From: Antechinus flavipes
Taxonomy: Eukaryota
Length of the DNA: 64,000 nucleotides
Direction: 5' to 3'
Assembly: GCF_016432865.1 (NCBI RefSeq)
Contig: NC_067403.1
Location: 252,402,001-252,466,000 of the forward strand
The position numbers were made by a program, and so were the translations under genes. The notes beneath the pieces were generated by a model. The model was not told the origin of the DNA. It did no database searches and saw only the letters and a program-made list of their open reading frames with translations. Of this stretch, positions 7,490 to 64,000 are shown in pieces. Positions within the stretch are counted from its first letter, which is position 1. Each line of letters opens with the position of its first letter.

Positions 7490-8665
7490 TCATTTCAGGG
7501 GAACCCCCTCGGGCTGCCCGGCCGGGCCGGGGGCTTTCTCTAGCTGTCTGGCCGTCCTGGCCCCCAGGCAGGGGAGCCAGCGGCGGGGGAAGCCCGCGGA
7601 GCTGAGGTTGGAGGAGGACCTGGACAGGGAGCCGCCCTGGGAGCTGCGGCGCCGGCGCCCGCTGCCGCACACCAGCTCGCTGTCCTCCACCAGCACGCTC
7701 TCCAGCACGCAGCGCAGCGAGTGGCGCAGCTTGGTCAGCACGTCGGGGCAGGTGAGCACGTAGAGGAAGGGGTTGACCACGCTGTTGATGAAGGCCAGGC
7801 TGGTGACGAAGGGCAGGGCCTGCCACACGGTCGAGCGCAGGCTGGAGTCGTGGTGGGCCCGCGCCTCCAGCAGGCTGAAGACGTGGTAGGGCAGCCAGCA
7901 GAGCACGAAGGCCGCGATGACGGCCATGACCAGGCGCAGGAAGCGGCTGGGCTGGCGGCGGCAGCGGTGGCGCACCCGCAGGCTGACCGCCAGGTAGCAG
8001 GCGCCGATGACGCCCAGGGGCACGGCGAACGCCAGCAGGAACTTGCTGACGGCCAGGGCGAGCTGGCGGCGGCCGCACAGCGCCTCCCCGGCGGCGTCGG
8101 CCGCGCCCGAGCTGTACAGCCGCAGGTTGTAGTAGCACATGACGCGCCCGTCGGCCCGCTGCATGGTGTCCCGGAACAGGAAGTAGGGGACCGTGTTGAG
8201 CAGGGCCAGGCCCCAGAGCGCCAGGCAGACCTTGTGCGCCGCGGCCACCGTGCGGTGGTTCTGGGCCCAGATGGGCTTCACCACCTGCAGGCAGCGGTCC
8301 AGGCTGATGGCGCTGAGCAGGAAGCCGCTGGCGAACATGTTCAGGAAGAAGACGGAGGAGTGCAGCTTGCAGAAGGTGGTCCCCAGCTGCCACGAGTGGC
8401 CCACGGCCAGGAAGTAGGTGAAGAAGGGCAGGCTGGCCGTGGCCAGCAGGTCGGAGAGCGCCAGGTGCAGCACCCACGTGGTGACCACCGTCTGGCGCAT
8501 GCGGCAGCCCACCACGTAGAGGATGACGGCGTTCTCCAGGATGCCCATCAGGGACACCAGCCCGTGCAGCGTCACCGACGCGTAGTCGATGTAGCGCCCG
8601 CTGGTGTTGGTGTGCGCCGGGAGCTCGCTCATGTACTGCAGGACGGGGCACAGCTTCTTGGGCTC
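7490..8665 (-). CDS. PTGDR2: PTGDR2 main coding exon
   Basis: Acceptor tctctccctcgcag|GAG CCC AAG AAG CTG TGC; open to stop at 7490; seven hydrophobic segments. Confidence 0.95.
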   Translation of the reverse strand, partial: EPKKLCPVLQYMSELPAHTNTSGRYIDYASVTLHGLVSLMGILENAVILYVVGCRMRQTVVTTWVLHLALSDLLATASLPFFTYFLAVGHSWQLGTTFCKLHSSVFFLNMFASGFLLSAISLDRCLQVVKPIWAQNHRTVAAAHKVCLALWGLALLNTVPYFLFRDTMQRADGRVMCYYNLRLYSSGAADAAGEALCGRRQLALAVSKFLLAFAVPLGVIGACYLAVSLRVRHRCRRQPSRFLRLVMAVIAAFVLCWLPYHVFSLLEARAHHDSSLRSTVWQALPFVTSLAFINSVVNPFLYVLTCPDVLTKLRHSLRCVLESVLVEDSELVCGSGRRRRSSQGGSLSRSSSNLSSAGFPRRWLPCLGARTARQLEKAPGPAGQPEGVPLK

Positions 8666-11600
8666 CTGCGAGGGAGAGACGGGCCCTCGGCTCAGACACC
8701 GGAGCCGGGCCGTCCCCTGGGCTCGGCCCGCGTCTGACTGCCTGCGGCTTCGGCTCTTCGAAATCATTTTAATGATTTCAGATTCATTGTTTAAATGATT
8801 ATTTTATTGATTTTTAAATTATTCCAGATTCATTTTTAAATGATTATTTTATTGATTTTTAAATCATTCCAGATTCATTTTTAAATGATTATTTTATTGA
8901 TTTTTAAATTATTCCAGATTCATTTTTAAATGATTATTTTATTGATTTTTAAATTATTCCAGATTCATTTTTAAATGATTATTTTATTGATTTTTAAATT
9001 ATTCCAGATTCATTTTTTAAATGATTATTTTATTGATTTTTAAATTATTCCAGATTCATTTTTTAAATGATTATTTTATGGGTTTTAAATTATTTCAGTT
9101 ATTTTTAATTTATTTACTTTATTGATTTTTAAATGATCATTTTTCAGTTATTTCAGATTTATTTTTAAAATTACTATGATTTACTGACTTTCAAATTATT
9201 TTTAATTCAGATTTATTTTTAAAATTACTATTATTTATTGACTTTCAAATGATTTTTTAATTAATTCAGACTTATTTTTAAAATTATTATTACTTTTTTT
9301 ATTTTACTCTGGTAAGAAATCAAGCCAGGATTCCCAAAGACCTAGAAGCTTGGAATACATATCAGAACTTCCTTCCTTTGTTTCTAACCACTGAGGAGGC
9401 TTCACCTGGAGGAGGCAGAGAATCCCTGCCCACCATCTTTGTCAGAACCAAGCATCGCCTCGAGGCATTCCTGCCCCTCTTCCCTCCTGGGTTGCCTCTT
9501 CCTAGCTCTACATGCTCTACAACTCAGCTGTCCTGGAGCATCCCATCCCATTTCTCTTTGTTCCCATGGAACTCTTCCCCTCCTGTCTGCCCTCCCAATC
9601 CATCCCCCCGGTCTCTCAACCTACTCAGAAAAGTAAATGCAAAACCTAATGCAGTCTGTCATGAAGAACCATACCCACCTGGGAGGGGAGGGTGTAGTTA
9701 GACTTTCCTGAGTAGGAGGCGGTCCTAGGACTGAATTCTAAGGGAAGCTGAGCATTCTGAAAGGAAGAGAGAAAGGGTCCCAGACGTGGGGCACAGTCTG
9801 AGCAAAAGCCCTGAGGTGGACCTGAAATATTATTTACAGAGAACATCCAACCTCGTCTCCAAAGACTTTGCCTTCAACCCATTCCCTCCCTGTCCTTTGA
9901 GCTTTTGTGTGCCACGGGCCCCCTTGGGCAGTCTAATGAGACCCATGGACTCCTCCAAATAGCAATGTCAAATGCATAAAATAAAAGCTTAGGATCACAA
10001 AGGGTGATCCTTGAAATGAAGCTGTAAAAACATTTTTTAAAAAACAATTTGACAGAGTCTCCCCCGCCTACATCTCGCTCCCCACGTTTAAGCCTTAAAC
10101 CTAAAGTTTACGAAATTCACCTAATATGCCAGCTTGCCCTCCTGGGGTTCCCTTTCTACTGGTAATTATGAGTTCCACTGGGGAATCTTCTTTCGAATGC
10201 TCTCCCACTCTATTTCATAGTTGTCATTTCCAGGGTCTAGTGTATCCATTTTGTCTGTAAACTCTTCCCTACATAAATCTACCTTTTGTCCCCCAAAAAG
10301 GGCTTGCCTAATAAATTTCCTTCTCTTCCACTCCCATCTCTCCCCTGTCTCCTTCCCATCACCCCCAGAGTCAAAACAAAATTCTCCCTTAGCCATGCCT
10401 TCTCAAACCATCATCCTGCCCCACTCCTGGAAAGCCAGGTCTGTGCTCTGCCCCCTCAGGTGGCAGGAAGGGACAGGGCAGTCCTGCTTCCGACCTGCTC
10501 TTCCTGAGAGTTCTGTGCCCTGACAAAGCAGCGGTGAGGGAGGAGATGGAGGAGGGATAGGGCAGGGAGCTCTGTCATCCTGCAACCAAGAGCTTCGGGT
10601 CTTTCCCTGGCTCCCACGGGCACCCAGACAGTCCCCACCAGTGGCTTAGTAGCTGCAGGCCCAGTGATGGCTAAGGCTGGCAGTGCCAGCCTCCCCCATC
10701 TGATATGCCAAGAGGAAGTGAGATAGGAACAACAGCAGAAGGAAAAGGGTTCCCCACACGCAGGCCCAGATAGGAAGACTGCTGCCCCATTGGGGGAGGA
10801 AAGGGGCCATGTCTGGATAGCCTGGATATTGTTACCCCCCAACAAGGGCAGCAAAAATGGATCCTCCAGTTCCCAAAGGCTCAAGGCCAGGGGCCAGGCT
10901 GTCAGAGAGCCTTTGAGCAGGACGTGGCCCACTGCACTCCTCAAATACTGAGGACATGCATGTCCCCAGCCCATACTGGGCACTCTGAGGTCCCCAGGAA
11001 GGTAGCTCTTGGGACTGAGGGACTTCCACCTGCGCACATGCTGCCAGAAAACAACCGTAGACAAGGTACAGGACTATGGGGGCAAAATGAGCCACGGCCA
11101 CGGGCACTCCTAGGGAGGGGGTGAGGAGGGAGGAATGTCAGCGAGTGTTAAATGATCTCTGTCTTATCACTGAGGATCCTGAAGCAGAGAGTGGTTAAGT
11201 CGCTTCAGGATCTTGCAGCTAGGAAGTGTCTGAGGAGATCTGGACTCGGTTCTTCCTGATTCCCGGTCCAGCACGCTCTGCCTCTAGGCTGGGGGGAGCC
11301 ATGACATGGGGGAGAGAGAGCTATCAGAGAAGGTTCTGAGCTGAGCCTTGAATTCAGGAAGGCAGAAAGACTTCACAGTCTTCTGTGAGGGTCACAGAGC
11401 CTCATTTTAAGGATGAGGAAACCGAAGAAGGAGAGGGTGTAGGACGGGATCACACAGGAAGTGGCAAAGCTGAGGGGAGGAGGGAAGTGGAGAAGTGGAC
11501 AGAGGATAGGAATAGCATCCCATCCCCCAAACAAGGGACAAAGCACAGCTGGCCATCACTGGATCTGCCAAATGCCCAGAACGAAGAGTCTCAGCTCACG

Positions 11601-13740
11601 CTCAGGTTCTCAGGCCTACAGAGCTCCTGTCCTGCACCGACCCTCTTGGTCCTGACAACATTCACTCCAATTTCACAGATGGGGAAAGAGGCTCAGGAAG
11701 ATGAAGGGCCTTCTCAGGCTCACATAGCTTGGCAGTATCTGTTGCAGTTTGAACTCGGCTCTTCCCTACCCTAGCTCCAACACTTCATCCACTATGCCCA
11801 TCCTGAGGGTGGCGTTTACTACTGTGTGACCCTGGCCAAGCCATCTCCCCTTCTCAGGGATTCAGAATCCCCCCCTCTATAAAATAAGGTGGTTAGACCA
11901 GCCAGAGCTAAGGGTCTCTCCAGTAAGTAAGACTTGTCACAAGCCGGGCCATGTCAGGAGCAGAAACTGGAGGCGAAGGATCCACAATTTTGGCACCTTG
12001 AGCCAGGTAACTCCTGATGTCCCTTCAAACCCATCAGCATCATTTTTAGTTCTAGGATCATAAACAGAACTAGGAAGGCCACTAAGGTCACTTTGAACCT
12101 CAGTTTCCTCATCTGTAAAATGGAGAGCAAATACTTATGATGAAGAGCAAGTTGAGATTGTGGATGTTCATATGTGTTATTGACTGGTGTTTTTTTTTAA
12201 AAATTCATTTTGTCTTTTATTTGAAACAAAAAAGCATTTCCATAATACAGTAGAATAAAAATGTCTGCACATGAAATCACAAATCTTCCATGCACAACTT
12301 GCTCTCCCTTTTAAATATATAATAAAGTTATTCTGTCTTGACACTAGTACCTTTACAGATACTAGAATTCCAAAAGAAGAAAAGAACTAAAAACTGAATT
12401 TGGTTCTTAAAACAAGAATTAAAGCCATTCGTATTATTAACAGTTTAGAGTTTGACTAATAGCCTGCAGCATAAATTATGGTTTACATAGCATCTACACC
12501 TAGAGTCAGGAAGATCTGGGTTCAAATCCTATCTCAGACAGTGTGAACCTACTCTAATAAGACACTTAAACTCTTTCTGCCTCGTTTTCCCCATCTGGAA
12601 AATGGAGTTTACAATACTCTCATTTCCTGCGTTTTCATGAGGATCAAATGAGATATTTGTCAATTGCTTTTCAGACTTTAAAGAGCTATGGCAGGACTGG
12701 TGTTCCTTGGCAGTAAATGGGCCACATGACAGAAATTCATTTGATTATAGCATGAGCTCTTCCCAGGCATTTTTTTTCTATATGAGCCAATCCTCTGATG
12801 ACAACGGGGTAGAAAAGCAGACAGTGCTGGCCTTAGGAAGCTGGAGGGGTTCCGAGGACCACAGAGATAGGGCTCGAAGGGACCTTCTAGTCCAATCCCA
12901 TCATTTTACAGTTGAGGAAACTGGCTGCAGGACATCTGGGCAGTCCCCTGGTCCAGCCACTTTATCTCCCAAGAAGAAAGTAAGAGGGAAAGTGAAAGTT
13001 TTTAACCACTGTGACCCCTGCCTAGCCTCCCCCACGGTTTTTCACAGTGCCCATCCAGCACGGAGTCCCTCTGGGAGAGAGAGAAAAGAAGAAGAAGAAG
13101 AAGACAAGNNNNNNNNNNNNNNNNNNNNNNNNNNNNNNNNNNNNNNNNNNNNNNNNNNNNNNNNNNNNNNNNNNNNNNNNNNNNNNNNNNNNNNNNNNNN
13201 NNNNNNNNNNNNNNNNNNNNNNNNNNNNNNNNNNNNNNNNNNNNNNNNNNNNNNNNNNNNNNNNNNNNNNNNNNNNNNNNNNNNNNNNNNNNNNNNNNNN
13301 NNNNNNNNNNNNNNNNNNNNNNNNNNNNNNNNNNNNNNNNNNNNNNNNNAGGTGAGAGAGACGGAGAGAGAGAGAGAGAGGAGAAGAGAGGAGAGGAGAG
13401 AAAAGGAGAGGAGAGAAGAGGAGAGGAGAGGAGAGGGAGATAGAGACAGCACAACGCAGAGAGAGTCGGAGAGAGAGAAATCAAGTATCAGCGGCAGAAT
13501 GGAACCTGGGACTTCAAGTCCGCATCCTAATCTCCTCCTCTCTCCCTCTCAGACGCACTCGGCTGCGTCCCGACCTCCGCGGAGGACGCCGACTACCCCC
13601 GGTGCGGGGTCTCCGGCTCCACCCCCGGCGCGGGGTCTCCGGCTCTCCCCCCGGCTTCTTTCCGCTCTTACCTGAGTCTCAGGTGCAAGTGTGAGAAGGT
13701 GGTGGAGGGGGACCCCTGTTGCCAGGCTGACGGCTCCCAT
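7490..13740 (-). CDS. PTGDR2: Prostaglandin D2 receptor 2 (CRTH2/GPR44); complement(join(7490..8665,13672..13740))
   Basis: Class A GPCR with LCPVLQYMS..NTS..RYID N-terminus, GCRMRQTVVTTWVLHLALSDLL, SAISLDRC, NSVVNPFLYVLTCPD. Position between CCDC86 and ZP1 fits synteny. The upstream coding exon is inferred (see findings). Confidence 0.9.
8770..9305. repeat. AT-rich 45-bp minisatellite (~7 near-perfect units to ~9095, then degenerate)
   Basis: Unit ATTCCAGATTCATTTTTAAATGATTATTTTATTGATTTTTAAATT repeated head-to-tail. Confidence 0.95.
9915..10030 (+). mobile_element. Ancient hAT/Charlie-like MITE fragment (related copies at ~17465-17560, ~19860-20010 and, reversed, ~57240-57370)
   Basis: Shared core ..GGACCCCTTCTCAGAATA..TAAATGCATAAAATAAAA..CAATTAT in four places. 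Family name from recall only. Confidence 0.5.
12480..12700 (+). mobile_element. MIR/CORE-SINE
   Basis: tRNA-like head (gagtcaggaagatctgggttcaaatcc) and core ctcgttttccccatctggaaaatgg...gaggatcaaatgagat. Confidence 0.65.
13109..13349. other. Assembly gap (241 N) inside a GA-rich simple repeat
   Basis: Run of N flanked by (GAA)n and (GA/GGAGA)n. Confidence 1.
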
Positions 13741-54049: not shown

Positions 54050-54099
54050 GGCGCCACCGCCGCTGCCGCCACCGCCGCCGCCGCCGCCGCCGCGCTGGG

Positions 54100-59700: not shown

Positions 59701-62181
59701 AAGACACAGGGGAGGGGGGAGTGGCGTCCAGTATAGGAAGAGGTATTTTTTTGGCCTTGGCAAGAAGGATGTCTTGGGGGAAGGAGGAAAACATGATCAT
59801 GAGATGGAGAGAATGTGACAGCAGGGAGCTCCCTCAGAATGGCCTCAAAAAAATTTTTTTTTCAGTAAAGCAGGAAGCAGGGTCCTAAATTTGCAAGTGT
59901 AATTGAGACCTGGCAAGTGCCCAAACCACCTGAAGTGGTGATGTTCTGACTGAAGAGACTCAGATCCTGCTTTTGAATAATTATGATCACCCTTATAGGA
60001 AAGTACTTTGGAATGACCAGAGCGGGCATGAATGTCCTGTAACAGGTTCCAGTTGATCAGCCAACATGATTGGAGGGAGACTTGTTTTACAGGTTTTGAC
60101 TCTAGAAAAGACTGTGTCTTCAAAAACTCCCGACTCAGTATGTTGGCTCATTATTGTTTCATTCCTGGAGGGACTCTGTGACCCTCATCAAGAATGATTT
60201 CAGGGGGTAAAAGAAAGGGTCAAAAAGCCTCCTACCTACCCTCTCCTCTGGCTTGTTCATTTCTGTTCTAAGGAAAGGGAGTAGAGCCTCTTATTTAGGT
60301 CAGAAATGAGAGTTATAGGAATCTAGGCATTGCATATTGAAATCTAGCCCAGAAGTTGTCCAGCTTGGTATCAGTGCCCCAAGGAGGGACCTTGGAGACT
60401 CGGCTCAACAGGACATGATCTTGGTACGGCTCATACTGTGAAGTCACTTGAATGAAGCTCAGACGGCCCTACTAGACATTATGGAAGAGAAGAGGGAGGG
60501 AGAGTGGATAGTACACCACTGGATGGTGGGGATATGTTTATCAATGTTTGCTCTTGCTATATTTTCAAAGTAAATCGCCCTTTACAAAGCTGATGGAGGT
60601 TAACTGGTTAAACAACTGGGATGTTGTTCACTAGCCCTTAAAATGTGGGAAACACTGCTGGTGGGACTCCTGTTGCTGGCAAAGAAAATAGATATTACCA
60701 ATCCCCTGAGGTTAGAGAGAAATGTATCTTTCCGACTCCAGAAGGTCAAAATGTATACATTACTACAAAATTGCTACATCTTTAATCCATTCATTGTGAT
60801 CTCTCACCCTTTTCTTTTTGCTCAACTCCTTTAATTGTCTAGACTTGAATAATAATCAAGGTTACTGGCTGTAAAATTTATTAGAGGAGCAATAAAAACA
60901 AATATGTAAAGAATAATTTGTACTAAGTCAGCTGTGGGAAAGCACACAAAGTTCTCTTTAACTATAACTCTAAGCGCCGTCTTAGGTCCGGGAACAAAAT
61001 TTCACTCTTGCCTCCCTATCTGCCTTTAAGATTCAGCTCAACCACTTCTTACTTGAGACCCTTTTTAATGGTTAGTGTCCTTTCTCTCTCTTTCCTATCC
61101 CCCAACTTTTATTTACAATATGCTTATGGTATTTACTTTCTGTTTACCTGAATCCCCAGTTATTGCAGGTAGAATCTAAGCTCCTTGAGAACAAGGCCTT
61201 CCCATTGTAGCAAATACCTCATAAATGCTTGTTTTTAAGGAAGCACAGATTTCCTTGGAAGATGTAATTTTTTTAAATTAAATTTTTATTTTTTTAAAGT
61301 CACTAAAACTCGGACTCCTGCCCCTCGAAATCCCTCCATCTTCCCCCTCAGTTCTCATAAGAAATAAGACCTTACTCCTTTTCTCCCTGCCCTGGCTTCA
61401 GCCATCACCGGATCCAGTAACTCCAGAATCACATTCAAACTCTGTCTCCTCATCCAATGGCAAACTGTCACTCCAAGATTCCATCACTTCTGCATGTCGC
61501 AGTAACATTAGCTATCATAATGTCTCTTGAAGAAAGTATTGAAATTGGTTCTGCACCTGGGAATAAAGCAGATAAGGAAAGACACCCCCCTTCTCTCTAC
61601 AGAGAGACCATTCTGTGGCTGTGGAATATGGCTCTATAGGGAAAGAACCTCAGCGTGAGGATCAGCTGTACTTCGAGGTCTATTTTGAGGTGGATGTTGG
61701 AAAGTGTAAAGACAAGGAGCACCAACCAGTTTTTTTTTGTTTGTTTGTTTTAAGGCTGTAAGCTCCTGGAGGACAGGGGCAACACTGTTTTTCTCTGGCT
61801 GGCTGGCTCTTACTAAGTACTCAATAAATGCCAACTGATTGGCCCATTGTCTGTTTTATCTTTGTGCCCCCCCCCCAATTCCGGGGCCTTCACAGAGACC
61901 CCTTTTTATAAGACACATCTAATTATGCAATAATTGGATCTACATGTTCCTAAAAACCACCCCCTTCCCCCTATGCAAAACGGAGCCATAAAAGCCACAG
62001 GACCTATGGGGGAAAGGGAGTTAGGGTACCACACTCAAAGACTTTGTAGATAACACATTTAAAAAAATAGACACAATTTTAAAAAGGGTGGCACAGTTTT
62101 ATACATGTTAAATGGCACTTCACCTTGAAAGAGACCTGAAGTTTGCTGGCTGAAGTGGGTTCCATCCGAAGGGCCTGCGAG

Positions 62182-63927
62182 CTACTGTGGAGTGACAGAC
62201 CGAGGGGTGTCCAAAGCCAGGTGAGAAGCTGCACTCCCAGATGTGCTCGGGCCATTGATTTCTCGTCTCTTAAGATACACATAGGATTTCTGCTGCTTTG
62301 CCAGCCTCCTCCTCTCGTACTGAAGGTGCCGGTAGGGTTCCAAATTGGTCCGGATGCCACGAGCCACTATTCTGCTGCGTTCAGCGTTGTAATCGTTGTC
62401 CTCCAGCCACTGCAGCTGCTTTTCTATCACCCCTAAAACGTCAGACAACTGGACCGTGTCCAGCTGCCTGGGAGCAGCCTTCGGGCTGTCTTCCTCATCC
62501 TCGTCCTCTGCCTCAGCCTGCCCTTCGGCAGCCAGCTGTCGCATGTCCTCAGAGGAGAGGCGATCAGGGGGCGCCTCTAGAAGCTCGTCTACGTCTTTCT
62601 TCTTGACCCCCTCAAATCCAACTTGCTTCGCCAGATCCACGCAACTTGCCTTGATTTTTTTTAATTGCTCCGAAGGTTCGAATCCTTTAAAGTCGTGAAT
62701 CAAGTCGGGGAGCATCTTCTTCCACACACGGTGCAGACACTCTCTGGTGACATCGTTCCAGGCTTCAACGATGATGTCGATGGCCATTTTGATGTTAAAT
62801 CGCTTCCAGAACTCGATAACGGTCTCTGCATTCTCCCCTCCGGTGGCCGAGAGCAGCATCTTAAATGTTCGCCTCAGGTAGTAAGCCTTGAACAGGGCTA
62901 TCACCCCTTGACCCAGGGGCTGGATCAGGGAGGTGGTTTCAGGGGGCAGAAAGATGAATTTGACATTGGGATTGAGCTCAGCGATGGTCAGGGGATGGCT
63001 CGGTGCGTTATCGATAATTATGAGAATCTTAAAAGCCAAGTTCTTTTTCTTGCAATAATCCTCTAGAACGGGGAAGAATTCGGCAAAAATGTCGATGCAG
63101 ACTTGGGCCGTCATCCAGCCCTTCTTGCTGTAGCGGTAGTGAACCCCGAGGCTGGCCCTGACGATGCCCCTCAAGGCCTGAGGATTGGCCGAGCGGTACA
63201 CCACTACGGGCTTGAGCTTCAGGTCCCCGCTGGCGTTGGCGCCCAGTAGGACGGTCACCCGGTCCTTGGCCGCCTTCGGCCCGGGCCCGTGCTTCTCGGC
63301 CCTGGAGATGTAGGTGCGTCGCGGCATGCGCTTGTAGTAGAGGCCCGTCTCGTCGAAGTTAAAGATCTGGTCGAGCGTGTAGCCCTCCTCCTTGACCAGC
63401 TTCTGGATGAGCGCCGGCAGCTCCTTGGCCGCCTTGAGCTGCGCGCTGGCCGCCTCGCCCAGCAGCTGCAGGCTCTGGAAGTTGTAGCGATGCTTGAAGC
63501 CGCTGAACCAGCCGCAGCTCGCCCGGAACGGCGCCACCTCGCCGGGGTTGGACGACTTGCGCTTCAGGTCGGCATAAATGGACAGGGCCTTGCCCTTGGC
63601 GGTCAGGAACGTGGTGCCCGACCTCTTGCCCTCCATCCACAGGCTCAGCAGCCTCTCCATCTCCTCGATCTCCCTGGGCCGCCCCCGGATGGACTTGGCT
63701 GCGCTCGTGCCGGTGCCGGTCCGGGACGTCTCCTTGATCTTGACCGCGTTGTCGCGGATGGTGCGCAGCGTTGACTCCTTGAGGCCCGTGGCGCGGGAGA
63801 TGTCGCACGTCCTCTCGTTGCCCTCAAAGCGCTTGATGATGTCCAGCTTCTCCTTGATGCTCAGGGCTTTCCTCTTGCCGGCCCCTCCGCCGCCCCCGGG
63901 CAGCTTGGAGCCCGGGCGCTTGGACAT
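62182..63927 (-). CDS. Tigger/pogo transposase-derived protein (TIGD1-like), 581 aa, single coding exon
   Basis: Intact ORF: CENP-B/psq HTH (KRKALSIKEKLDIIKRF), Tc5 HTH (FRASCGWFSGFKHR), DDE_1 domain (QIFNFDETGLY, KDRVTVLLGANASGDLKLKP, IIIDNAPSH, TTSLIQPLGQGVI..FKAYY), acidic C-terminal tract. Confidence 0.9.
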   Translation of the reverse strand: MSKRPGSKLPGGGGGAGKRKALSIKEKLDIIKRFEGNERTCDISRATGLKESTLRTIRDNAVKIKETSRTGTGTSAAKSIRGRPREIEEMERLLSLWMEGKRSGTTFLTAKGKALSIYADLKRKSSNPGEVAPFRASCGWFSGFKHRYNFQSLQLLGEAASAQLKAAKELPALIQKLVKEEGYTLDQIFNFDETGLYYKRMPRRTYISRAEKHGPGPKAAKDRVTVLLGANASGDLKLKPVVVYRSANPQALRGIVRASLGVHYRYSKKGWMTAQVCIDIFAEFFPVLEDYCKKKNLAFKILIIIDNAPSHPLTIAELNPNVKFIFLPPETTSLIQPLGQGVIALFKAYYLRRTFKMLLSATGGENAETVIEFWKRFNIKMAIDIIVEAWNDVTRECLHRVWKKMLPDLIHDFKGFEPSEQLKKIKASCVDLAKQVGFEGVKKKDVDELLEAPPDRLSSEDMRQLAAEGQAEAEDEDEEDSPKAAPRQLDTVQLSDVLGVIEKQLQWLEDNDYNAERSRIVARGIRTNLEPYRHLQYERRRLAKQQKSYVYLKRREINGPSTSGSAASHLALDTPRSVTPQ

Positions 63928-64000
63928 GTCCGGGCCGGGGGCGAGCGCCGGCCTTAAGCAGGGACACGGTAGCGATGGGCGGCGCCGCCGGGGCAGGGGC

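What the first reader, a model, noticed from the sequence alone, without database searches (positions are those of the whole stretch)
62182..63927. Candidate marsupial-specific domesticated Tigger transposase gene upstream of PRPF19
Seen: 581 uninterrupted codons in a window where the other old transposon copies are fragmented or decayed. Both HTH domains are intact; D192 (NFDETG) and D306 (IIDNAPSH) are kept but the third residue is Gly339 (QPLGQG, GGT at 62913-62911, one change from GAT) at DD32D spacing. No terminal inverted repeats seen on the 3' side; N-terminal Gly linker, basic NLS-like KRK and acidic EDEDEED tract. Known: pogo/Tigger transposases were repeatedly domesticated (CENP-B, JRK, TIGD1-7), often keeping DNA binding and losing catalysis; from recall, human has TMEM109 and no TIGD gene next to PRPF19. 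Inference: an independent exaptation giving a sequence-specific DNA-binding protein that might recognise Tigger/MITE ends genome-wide, possibly sharing a CpG promoter with the next gene beyond the window.
Basis: partly seen in the sequence, partly recalled or inferred. Interest (0 to 1): 0.85.

Follow-up and report, generated by a model that had tools for sequence, protein, structure and literature searches.

The report
Marsupial domesticated Tigger transposase gene
The 581-codon reading frame is a real gene derived from a Tigger "jumping gene"; marsupials have kept it intact at the same chromosomal spot since before their living orders diverged, it has a previously unnoticed sister gene 3.3-3.6 Mb away, and no paper I could find describes either.

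Summary
Confirmed. Window 62182-63927 (-) is an intact 581-aa pogo/Tigger-type protein (Pfam DDE_1 2e-40, CENP-B_N 5e-7). Its triad is D192, D306, G339. The window comes from Antechinus flavipes.

- **Orthologs:** RefSeq "TIGD1-like" models exist in 8 marsupial species. In six of them, counting the window, I verified the position next to TMEM109; PRPF19 downstream was seen in three. All eight carry Gly at the third catalytic position.
- **Selection:** dN/dS among orthologs is 0.08-0.12.
- **Not a known TIGD gene:** identity is 35% to TIGD1 and 28% or less to JRKL, JRK, TIGD2-7, CENPB, POGK and POGZ. TIGD1 falls in a separate clade.
- **Paralog "B":** a second gene, about 75% identical, lies 3.3-3.6 Mb away on the same chromosome, upstream of a serpin gene. 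It is present in 9 species. It keeps Asp in Diprotodontia and Dromiciops and lost it independently in dasyurids (Gly) and didelphids (Asn).
- **Transposon origin:** both genes keep terminal-inverted-repeat relics (CAGTCAGTTCTGCTATAA) that match a shark transposon of the same family.
- **Promoter:** gene A sits in the TMEM109 CpG island.

Most likely it is a nuclear, sequence-specific DNA-binding protein that cannot transpose. It is a new member of a known kind. The scan noted this same stretch before, on the same DNA.

The parts
62182..63927 (-). Single-exon coding sequence of marsupial Tigger-derived gene 'A' (581 aa), Antechinus flavipes ortholog
   Evidence: ORF. The exact protein is in the public collection on the 264,590,327-bp contig that also carries Antechinus flavipes paralog B. 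Orthologs are 85-98% identical in 7 other marsupials. dN/dS is 0.08-0.12.
63736..63876 (-). First helix-turn-helix (CENP-B_N, aa 18-64)
   Evidence: Pfam E 5.5e-7, 29.6 bits. It is 72% identical to the shark transposase against 59% overall. dN/dS is 0.09.
63475..63660 (-). Second helix-turn-helix (HTH_Tnp_Tc5-like, aa 90-151), diverged
   Evidence: Pfam 14.1 bits, E 0.046, below the cut-off. The family profile matches CENP-B 1HLV across positions 19-152 at E 7e-15. dN/dS over aa 71-170 is 0.34, the highest of the folded domains.
62722..63267 (-). DDE_1 match (aa 221-402), the larger part of the RNase H-like core (aa 186-405)
   Evidence: Pfam E 2.2e-40. AF2 pLDDT is 85-97 in this region. Foldseek matches Mos1 (3HOT, E 1.9e-5), SETMAR and Sleeping Beauty catalytic domains. 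dN/dS is 0.05.
63352..63354 (-). First catalytic Asp, D192 (GAC, in NFDETG)
   Evidence: Kept in all 17 marsupial A and B proteins.
63010..63012 (-). Second catalytic Asp, D306 (GAT, in IIDNAPSH)
   Evidence: An invariant column in the 38-sequence alignment A3.
62911..62913 (-). Third catalytic position, replaced by Gly339 (GGT, in QPLGQG)
   Evidence: Gly in all 8 A orthologs. Asp in the transposon relatives and in paralog B of Diprotodontia and Dromiciops.
62488..62508 (-). Acidic tract EDEDEED (aa 474-480) in a low-confidence linker
   Evidence: AF2 pLDDT is below 50 for aa 471-485.
62257..62457 (-). C-terminal three-helix domain (aa 491-557), the most constrained part of the protein
   Evidence: dN/dS is 0.02 in both A and B. 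AF2 pLDDT is 91.5 when modelled alone. It is conserved across Tigger1-like transposases. It has no Pfam family and no PDB fold match.
61916..62181 (-). Transposon-derived 3' untranslated region, homologous to that of paralog B
   Evidence: Collinear blastn hits between the A and B 3' UTRs in Dromiciops (E 8e-10 and 1e-7), ending about 20 bp before the right TIR. Alignment A2.
61916..61933 (-). Probable degenerate right TIR relic (11 of 18 bases match the family TIR), identified by position only
   Evidence: Alignment A2 places it opposite the intact right TIR of Dromiciops B, L002 12188-12205. No match at 3 or fewer mismatches in the window.
63928..64000 (-). Start of the 5' UTR and CpG island; the left TIR relic and the TMEM109 first exon lie beyond the window edge
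   Evidence: GC 0.70 and CpG o/e 0.85. In the orthologous loci the left TIR relic lies about 310-320 bp upstream of the ATG.

Best explanation
This is the Antechinus flavipes copy of a marsupial-wide, single-exon gene that arose when a Tigger-family (pogo superfamily) DNA transposon inserted beside the TMEM109 promoter CpG island, between TMEM109 and PRPF19, before living marsupial orders diverged. The host kept the transposase reading frame under strong purifying selection. The third catalytic Asp became Gly in the common ancestor of all sampled orthologs, so the protein should no longer be able to cut and paste DNA. It keeps a CENP-B-type two-module DNA-binding domain whose first recognition module is still close to that of the active transposon, an RNase H-like core, an acidic linker, and a very strongly conserved C-terminal three-helix domain. 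It therefore most likely acts as a nuclear, sequence-specific DNA-binding protein in the manner of TIGD, JRK and CENP-B proteins, and it is probably transcribed from the bidirectional CpG-island promoter it shares with TMEM109. Shown here: the origin, age, synteny, selection and loss of the third Asp. Inferred: nuclear DNA binding, use of that promoter, and the biological role. A paralog (B), upstream of a serpin gene 3.3-3.6 Mb away, comes from the same transposon family and forms a sister clade.
For: The ORF and its domains are. The same protein family occurs in 8 species of four orders: Didelphimorphia, Microbiotheria, Diprotodontia and Dasyuromorphia. The TMEM109 neighbour (Pfam BRI3BP, opposite strand) is seen, and PRPF19 on the same strand downstream. 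Pairwise dN/dS (NG86) is 0.083 for Antechinus-Sarcophilus and 0.10-0.12 against Dromiciops, with bootstrap 95% limits of 0.036-0.153. In the tree, A (8 species) and B (9 species) are each monophyletic at 100/100 and are sisters at 100/99. Each gene tree puts didelphids basal, as the species tree does. TIGD1 lies in another starred clade. Identity to human TIGD1 is 35% and to every other known family member 28% or less. The family profile matches the CENP-B DNA-binding domain at E 7e-15. The fold matches Mos1 and SETMAR. TIR relics: B of Dromiciops has TA-flanked 18-20 nt ends that are 95% complementary. A of Dromiciops has a left-end relic with 2 mismatches at the equivalent position, where 0.02 matches are expected by chance. 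A shark copy carries the same TIR. In the orthologous loci a CpG island runs from about 1.4 kb upstream through the coding sequence, with an NRF1 palindrome just outside the left TIR relic; the 73 bp upstream held in the window are equally CpG-rich. Annotated TMEM109 isoforms end about 280 bp from the ATG in Petaurus and Monodelphis. As a hint of transcription, RNA-labelled runs of a related species hold the same share of the stretch's words as that species' genome-sized runs, and three small runs of the window's species hold 97-98%.
Against: The kind of the small runs is unknown. DNA binding, nuclear localisation and targets are untested. The second HTH falls below Pfam's threshold. Genome-wide copy number was judged only from annotated proteomes and about 170 kb of marsupial DNA, not from whole genomes. 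Absence from eutherians and monotremes rests on protein databases and on recall of the human locus; decayed relics there were not looked for.
Confidence: 0.82

Rival explanations
1. The gene pair is older than marsupials. The transposon was domesticated, or A and B separated, before the metatherian-eutherian split, and eutherians (and perhaps monotremes) later lost both copies. On this reading the gene is retained only by marsupials rather than born in them.
For: Synonymous divergence between A and B is saturated (dS above 2), against 0.5-0.8 for Antechinus-Dromiciops orthologs. The A and B untranslated regions are only 46-51% identical, against 73-83% for orthologs. The stem branches of A and B (0.097 and 0.086) are about as long as or longer than the crown depth.
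Against: No eutherian, monotreme or sauropsid protein lies closer than 49%. The closest, from echidna, sits at another locus (between a cyclin and MRPL20) and branches outside the shark, Trichuris and marsupial group. If A and B are two insertions of already diverged transposon copies, their divergence overstates the age of domestication. Rates may also have been faster early on.
Confidence: 0.2
2. It is an ordinary, possibly still mobile or recently mobile Tigger copy whose ORF happens to be intact.
For: TIR relics and transposon-derived UTRs are still recognisable. The family is multi-copy in a shark, where a second element end sits next to the shark copy.
Against: The insertion sits at the same site in species of four marsupial orders. 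dN/dS is about 0.1. The third catalytic residue is lost in all orthologs. Only two paralogs appear per proteome, about 75% identical. No other TIR match was found in about 170 kb of marsupial DNA.
Confidence: 0.01
3. It is the marsupial ortholog of a known gene (TIGD1-7, JRK, JRKL, CENPB, POGK or POGZ) that has moved to a new locus.
For: RefSeq names it 'TIGD1-like', and the best reviewed match is human TIGD1.
Against: Identity to TIGD1 is only 35%, and 16-28% to the others. Afrotherian TIGD1 proteins cluster with a marsupial SCAN-Tigger protein in a separate starred clade, far from A and B.
Confidence: 0.01
4. The protein keeps an enzymatic role, such as DNA nicking or another nuclease-like activity, using the two remaining Asp residues. 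Its conservation would then reflect catalysis rather than only DNA binding.
For: The RNase H-like core is under very strong constraint (dN/dS 0.05), and D192 and D306 are invariant in all 17 marsupial proteins.
Against: The DDD/DDE triad is needed for metal-ion catalysis in this superfamily (established knowledge for Mos1 and other Tc1/mariner transposases). The third position was lost three separate times in the family: in the A stem, in dasyurid B and in didelphid B. That argues catalysis is dispensable. Catalytic cores are also conserved in other domesticated transposases that are thought to be inactive.
Confidence: 0.05

Closest known systems
TIGD1 / Tigger1 transposase (human Q96MW7)
   Same: The architecture matches from end to end: two CENP-B-type HTH modules, a DDE_1 core, an acidic linker and a C-terminal helical domain. 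The structural alignment covers aa 18-581. It is the closest reviewed protein.
   Different: Identity is only 35%. TIGD1 sits in a different starred clade and at a different locus. TIGD1 copies are reported as multi-copy (PMC7386202), whereas this gene is a single syntenic ortholog in each marsupial.
Stationary domesticated pogo genes: JRK, JRKL, TIGD2-7, CENPB, CENPBD1, POGK, POGZ (Gao et al. 2020, PMC7386202)
   Same: The kind of event is the same: a complete pogo/Tigger transposase ORF kept as a host gene under purifying selection at a fixed locus. The DNA-binding domain is retained and the catalytic triad is often degraded.
   Different: This is an independent event from another Tigger lineage, 16-28% identical to those genes, and restricted to marsupials among sampled taxa. 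That survey set 'TIGD1-like' sequences aside as pseudogene-like and did not analyse them. Unlike the paper's operational criterion of no TIR or TSD, TIR relics survive here.
CENP-B DNA-binding domain (PDB 1HLV)
   Same: The N-terminal 19-152 region matches CENP-B(1-129) by profile at E 7e-15, and Foldseek gives 29% identity. This supports a two-module, sequence-specific DNA-binding domain.
   Different: No match to the CENP-B dimerisation domain was found for the C-terminal domain. The target sequence is presumably the family's own TIR rather than the CENP-B box (inference).
Autonomous Tigger-like transposons of Chiloscyllium (shark) and Trichuris (whipworm)
   Same: These are the nearest relatives (58-59% identity) and share the C-terminal domain. 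The shark copy carries the same TIR, CAGTCGGTTCTGCTAGAA.
   Different: They keep the third Asp, although the sampled shark copy has Glu at the first position. They show transposon features: multiple proteins in Trichuris, and a neighbouring element end in the shark. They are not syntenic with the marsupial genes.

Membership tests
pogo/Tigger transposase superfamily (sequence descent) | DDE_1 (RNase H-like) catalytic domain | tested here: met
   Pfam PF03184, E 2.2e-40, full profile 1-177. The fold matches Mos1 and SETMAR.
pogo/Tigger transposase superfamily (sequence descent) | N-terminal CENP-B-type HTH (PF04218) | tested here: met
   29.6 bits against a cut-off of 21.2. Profile match to 1HLV at E 7e-15.
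pogo/Tigger transposase superfamily (sequence descent) | Second HTH (HTH_Tnp_Tc5, PF03221) | tested here: inconclusive
   14.1 bits against a cut-off of 22.2, although aligned over profile positions 4-63 of 66. Transposon relatives score 31-36 bits. The 1HLV match spans both modules.
pogo/Tigger transposase superfamily (sequence descent) | Complete DDD catalytic triad (needed for an active transposase) | tested here: not met
   The triad is D192, D306, G339 in the window and in all 8 orthologs. It descends from the family but is not an active member.
pogo/Tigger transposase superfamily (sequence descent) | Terminal inverted repeats with a TA target-site duplication | tested here: inconclusive
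   In the window there is only an 11/18 right-end relic, and the left end lies beyond the window. The ortholog in Dromiciops keeps a left relic with 2 mismatches. Paralog B in Dromiciops has both ends flanked by TA.
Domesticated ('stationary') transposase gene | Orthologs at the same locus across distant species | tested here: met
   TMEM109 on one side in Gracilinanus, Monodelphis, Dromiciops, Petaurus, Sarcophilus and, by collinearity with Sarcophilus, Antechinus. PRPF19 on the other side in Petaurus, Sarcophilus and Antechinus.
Domesticated ('stationary') transposase gene | Purifying selection (dN/dS well below 1) | tested here: met
   0.08-0.12, with bootstrap upper limits of 0.15 or less.
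Domesticated ('stationary') transposase gene | Single or low copy number in the genome | tested here: inconclusive
   Each proteome holds two paralogs, and no further TIR matches were found in about 170 kb of marsupial DNA. No whole-genome search was possible with these tools.
Domesticated ('stationary') transposase gene | Transcription as a host gene | tested here: inconclusive
   RNA-labelled runs of a related species, and small runs of the same species, hold the stretch.
Known mammalian genes TIGD1-7, JRK, JRKL, CENPB, POGK, POGZ (orthology) | Ortholog-level sequence identity and shared clade | tested here: not met
   Identity is 35% to TIGD1 and 16-28% to the rest. TIGD1 is in a separate starred clade.
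Known mammalian genes TIGD1-7, JRK, JRKL, CENPB, POGK, POGZ (orthology) | Shared chromosomal neighbourhood | not testable with these tools
   That human has no TIGD gene between TMEM109 and PRPF19 is recalled, not tested here.

The most novel reading that the evidence does not exclude
A and B form a two-gene system built on their own transposon ends. B keeps the full DDD triad in Diprotodontia and Dromiciops, and in Dromiciops it also keeps both TA-flanked TIRs at 95% complementarity despite its age. It may therefore still be a catalytically competent, 'stationary' transposase or nuclease. A lost the third Asp early but keeps a near-ancestral first HTH, and in Dromiciops a left TIR relic only 2 mismatches from the family sequence. 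A could bind the same ends, either as an autoregulator of both genes or as an inactive partner or antagonist of B. This would resemble the pairing of active and inactive domesticated transposases in other systems.
Probability: 0.12. Interest if true: 0.8.

Novelty: new member of a known kind. Interest (0 to 1): 0.6.

Why it matters
Pogo/Tigger transposases are the most often domesticated transposases in mammals, but the catalogued cases (CENPB, JRK, JRKL, TIGD1-7, POGK, POGZ, CENPBD1) come from eutherian-centred surveys. The main survey explicitly set 'TIGD1-like' sequences aside as pseudogene-like (PMC7386202).

This work shows that two such 'TIGD1-like' loci are genuine, strongly constrained genes. 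Both are shared by all four marsupial orders sampled and appear absent from other mammals. They add a lineage-specific pair to the catalogue.

The pair also offers a natural experiment. One family lost the third catalytic Asp three separate times, while some lineages of the paralog keep the triad together with recognisable transposon ends. Gene A shows a simple route to domestication, by landing in a neighbour's CpG-island promoter.

The biology could be tested directly in Monodelphis or in dasyurid cell lines.

Tried and rejected
- **Read laying:** After that I worked beside those places and sent none of their letters to any tool (the local BLASTs left them out).
- **The look-up of encoding contigs:** it returned no DNA for Gracilinanus, Monodelphis, Petaurus, Vombatus or Trichosurus. 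dN/dS and TIR comparisons therefore rest on three species per paralog, and TIRs of the DDD-keeping diprotodont B genes could not be examined.
- **phmmer against the PDB:** the single protein found nothing. Only the family profile reached CENP-B.
- **C-terminal domain:** no Pfam family, no meaningful PDB sequence match and no fold match at E below 2.5. The idea that it resembles the CENP-B dimerisation domain found no support in the fold search.
- **Literature:** searches for a described marsupial Tigger or TIGD gene, for Trichuris Tigger horizontal transfer, and for a Sarcophilus transposase fusion found nothing relevant.
- **Constraint on UTRs and TIRs:** I tested whether they are more conserved among orthologs than the surrounding DNA. 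They are not: 73-83% identity inside against 73-82% outside. The near-perfect TIRs of Dromiciops B are only suggestive of constraint; my rough Poisson estimate is p about 0.02 under the minimum age.
- **Segmental duplication versus transposition:** A-B similarity is detectable only within the element (blastn hits stop about 20 bp short of the right TIR). Because neutral sequence of that age is at the alignment baseline anyway, this favours transposition but does not prove it.
- **Gene conversion:** I rejected it as the cause of the shared Gly codon in dasyurid A and B, because the neighbouring codons differ.
Full report
**Observation**

The minus strand of the window carries one uninterrupted ORF from ATG at 63927 to TAG at 62182, 581 aa. 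Pfam finds a full-length DDE_1 domain (E 2.2e-40) and a CENP-B_N helix-turn-helix (E 5.5e-7). D192 is GAC at 63354-63352, D306 is GAT at 63012-63010, and the third position is Gly339, GGT at 62913-62911, within QPLGQG and 32 residues after D306.

HTH_Tnp_Tc5 reaches only 14.1 bits (E 0.046; cut-off 22.2), whereas transposon relatives score 31-36 bits. A profile of the family nevertheless matches the two-module CENP-B DNA-binding domain (1HLV) at E 7e-15 over positions 19-152. GC content rises from about 0.5 at the 3' end to about 0.7 at the 5' end of the gene.

**Source and relatives**

An exact look-up shows the protein is already in public databases, on a 264,590,327-bp contig. That contig also carries an Antechinus flavipes paralog, so the window is Antechinus flavipes. 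RefSeq models named "tigger transposable element-derived protein 1-like" fall into two groups.

- **Group A**, to which the window belongs, has members in Antechinus, Sarcophilus, Monodelphis, Gracilinanus, Trichosurus, Dromiciops, Phascolarctos and Petaurus, 85-98% identical to the window protein.
- **Group B** has members in Vombatus, Dromiciops, Petaurus, Trichosurus, Phascolarctos, Antechinus, Sarcophilus, Gracilinanus and Monodelphis, about 75-77% identical to A.

The nearest proteins outside marsupials are a shark (Chiloscyllium) protein at 59% and Trichuris proteins at 58-60%. A metagenome fragment is 70% identical over 291 aa. The nearest other mammal is an echidna protein at 49%.

**Synteny**

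Group A lies head to head with a BRI3BP-family gene (TMEM109) in Gracilinanus, Dromiciops, Petaurus, Sarcophilus and Monodelphis. TMEM132A lies beyond TMEM109, and PRPF19 follows on the same strand in Petaurus and Sarcophilus. The window is collinear with the Sarcophilus locus. This places PRPF19's ATG near 54070, 8.1 kb downstream of the stop codon.

Group B lies 7-8 kb upstream of a serpin gene in Vombatus, Dromiciops, Antechinus, Sarcophilus and Trichosurus. A and B are on the same chromosome, 3.30 Mb apart in Dromiciops and 3.64 Mb apart in Sarcophilus, in opposite orientation. From recall, human SERPING1 and PRPF19 lie a similar distance apart on 11q12, so the serpin is probably SERPING1. 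That is an inference.

**Selection**

I built codon alignments of three A and three B coding sequences. Nei-Gojobori dN/dS for A is 0.083 (Antechinus-Sarcophilus), 0.103 (Antechinus-Dromiciops) and 0.115 (Sarcophilus-Dromiciops). For B it is 0.055-0.081. All bootstrap 95% upper limits are 0.15 or less.

By domain, the RNase H-like core has omega 0.05. The C-terminal helices (aa 501-555) have 0.02 in both paralogs. The region containing the second HTH has 0.34 in A. The last 26 residues are nearly unconstrained. Between A and B, dS is saturated (above 2) with dN 0.14-0.16.

**Phylogeny and known genes**

I ran a maximum-likelihood tree of 46 proteins. A and B are each monophyletic (100/100) and are sister clades (100/99). 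Didelphids are basal in each, matching the species tree. The next branches are the Trichuris elements, the metagenome fragment, and then shark plus a lobster fragment. The echidna protein lies further out. True TIGD1 (afrotherian proteins) groups with a marsupial SCAN-Tigger protein in a distant starred clade.

A structure-based search of reviewed proteins gives 35% identity to human TIGD1. It gives 28% to JRKL, 24% to TIGD2, 23% to JRK and TIGD6, 21% to TIGD4, TIGD5 and CENPB, 20% to TIGD7, 17% to TIGD3, 18% to POGK and 16% to POGZ. The gene is therefore not an ortholog of any catalogued family member.

**Transposon ends**

In Dromiciops B an inverted repeat flanks the gene 326 bp upstream of the ATG and 420-440 bp downstream of the stop codon. 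It reads TA-CACTCAGTTCTGCTATAA ... TTATAGCAGAACTGACTG-TA and is 95% complementary. That is a canonical pogo/Tc1-type end with a TA duplication and an element length of about 2.5 kb.

- The left end is kept in Antechinus and Sarcophilus B, with 2 mismatches.
- Dromiciops A has CAGTCCGTTCTGCAATAA at the equivalent place, 313 bp upstream of the ATG. It is the only match in 21.7 kb, where 0.02 are expected by chance.
- Sarcophilus A is more decayed.
- The shark copy has CAGTCGGTTCTGCTAGAA 255 bp after its stop codon, and the end of another element sits just upstream. The family is therefore a true transposon in the shark.

Alignments of the flanks show weak A-B homology through both untranslated regions. 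The blastn hits are E 8e-10 and 1e-7 in the 3' UTR, and they stop about 20 bp short of the right TIR. In the window, the right-end relic falls at about 61916-61933. Only 11 of 18 bases match, so it is recognisable by position alone. The left end lies beyond base 64000.

These data favour two transposition insertions from one family over a segmental duplication. They could represent a local hop along the chromosome. Neutral sequence of this age is already at the alignment baseline, so this is not proven.

**Catalytic residues across the family**

All 17 marsupial proteins keep the first two Asp residues. Gly replaces the third in all eight A orthologs. In B the third position is Asp in the four diprotodonts and in Dromiciops, Gly in the two dasyurids (GAT to GGT, with different neighbouring codons from A), and Asn in the two didelphids. 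The third Asp was therefore lost at least three separate times, while the rest of the core stayed under strong constraint.

**Structure**

An AlphaFold2 model built with a 38-sequence alignment has mean pLDDT 78. Confidence is high for the two HTH modules, the RNase H-like core (85-97) and three C-terminal helices. It is low for the N-terminal Gly-rich tail, the linkers and the acidic tract. Foldseek matches Mos1 paired-end complexes (E 1.9e-5), SETMAR and Sleeping Beauty catalytic domains, and the CENP-B DNA-binding domain.

The C-terminal domain modelled alone has pLDDT 91.5. It has no Pfam family and no solved structural match. It is shared with Tigger1-like transposases across animals.

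**Promoter context**

In Sarcophilus and Dromiciops a CpG island (CpG o/e 0.7-1.2) runs from about 1.4 kb upstream through most of the A coding sequence. An NRF1-type palindrome, GCGCATGCGC, lies about 80-200 bp outside the left TIR relic. In Petaurus and Monodelphis, annotated TMEM109 isoforms end about 280 bp from the A start codon, on the other strand. So the element landed at the edge of the TMEM109 promoter, and A most likely uses it bidirectionally. This agrees with an earlier first-reader note (s1-189140).

B, by contrast, has AT-rich, CpG-poor flanks, yet a coding sequence with CpG o/e near 1.

**Expression**

Only indirect evidence was obtained. Three small runs of the window's species (50-58 million letters, kind not stated) hold 97-98% of the sampled words of 61500-64000. 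RNA-labelled runs of a related species hold the same share (0.29) as that species' genome-sized runs. The first canonical AATAAA lies 892 nt after the stop codon, at 61290.

**Literature**

Gao et al. 2020 (PMC7386202) catalogue pogo-derived genes in vertebrates. They state that "TIGD1-like" sequences were excluded as pseudogene-like, with the data not shown. Six further full-text searches found no description of these marsupial genes.

**Verdict**

The ORF is a domesticated Tigger transposase gene that was fixed before the marsupial radiation. From general knowledge, that radiation began roughly 75-90 Mya. The gene is under strong purifying selection, lacks the third catalytic residue, and is not orthologous to known TIGD genes. 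It is one of a pair.

Its function as a nuclear, sequence-specific DNA-binding protein, possibly recognising its family's TIR, is inferred from three things. The CENP-B-type DNA-binding domain is retained. The first HTH module is close to that of the shark transposase. Analogous domesticated proteins behave this way.

It is a new member of a known kind. The gene models exist in RefSeq, but the genes appear to be undescribed.

Noticed in passing
L004:10001-11779 (Antechinus, same genome); also L005:10001-11782 and L002:10001-11767: Paralog B of the gene lies 7-8 kb upstream of a serpin gene, on the same chromosome 3.3-3.6 Mb from A. Its dN/dS is 0.055-0.08. The third catalytic residue is Asp in Diprotodontia and Dromiciops, Gly in dasyurids and Asn in didelphids.
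   Followed up: yes
L002:9675-9694 and 12188-12207: Dromiciops B keeps both TA-flanked terminal inverted repeats at 95% complementarity, together with an intact DDD triad. In dasyurids, where the Asp is lost, the right end is decayed or deleted. This may point to constraint on the ends.
   Followed up: partly
L005:~8588-8727 and L004:~8682-8751: A fragment of about 140 bp of B-type coding sequence (aa 263-310), with stop codons, lies 1.3 kb upstream of B in both dasyurids. It looks like a decayed partial duplicate.
   Followed up: partly
Proteins P0135, P0284, P0286 (Sarcophilus, Antechinus): A separate marsupial gene fuses a SCAN box to a Tigger transposase (670-934 aa). It is 42% identical to this protein and groups with true TIGD1 in the tree.
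   Followed up: no
L007:10001-11725 (echidna): An intact 574-aa Tigger ORF, with the third Asp kept (QPMDQG), lies between a cyclin gene and MRPL20 in Tachyglossus. It is 49% identical and not orthologous to A or B. It may be another domestication or an intact element.
   Followed up: partly
Proteins P0008, P0009, P0015 (Trichuris suis, T. muris): Whipworm Tigger elements are the sister clade (100/99) of the marsupial genes, closer than any vertebrate transposon sampled. A metagenome fragment (P0134, 70% identical, DDD intact, host unknown) is the next branch.
   Followed up: partly
L001:9607 and L003:9481: An NRF1-type palindrome, GCGCATGCGC, lies just outside the left TIR relic of gene A in Dromiciops and Sarcophilus, inside the CpG island shared with TMEM109.
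   Followed up: partly
L002, L004, L005: 10001-11800 against their flanks: B's coding sequence has CpG o/e of 0.6-1.2, although its flanks are AT-rich with CpG o/e of 0-0.3. It behaves like an orphan CpG-rich island confined to the ORF.
   Followed up: no
window 63418-63927 (codons 1-170): Synonymous divergence between Antechinus and Dromiciops is 0.19-0.23 in the 5' third of gene A and 0.6-1.3 in the rest. This fits protection of the CpG-island part from methylation-driven mutation.
   Followed up: no
Nothing was laid, and the places were avoided afterwards.
   Followed up: no
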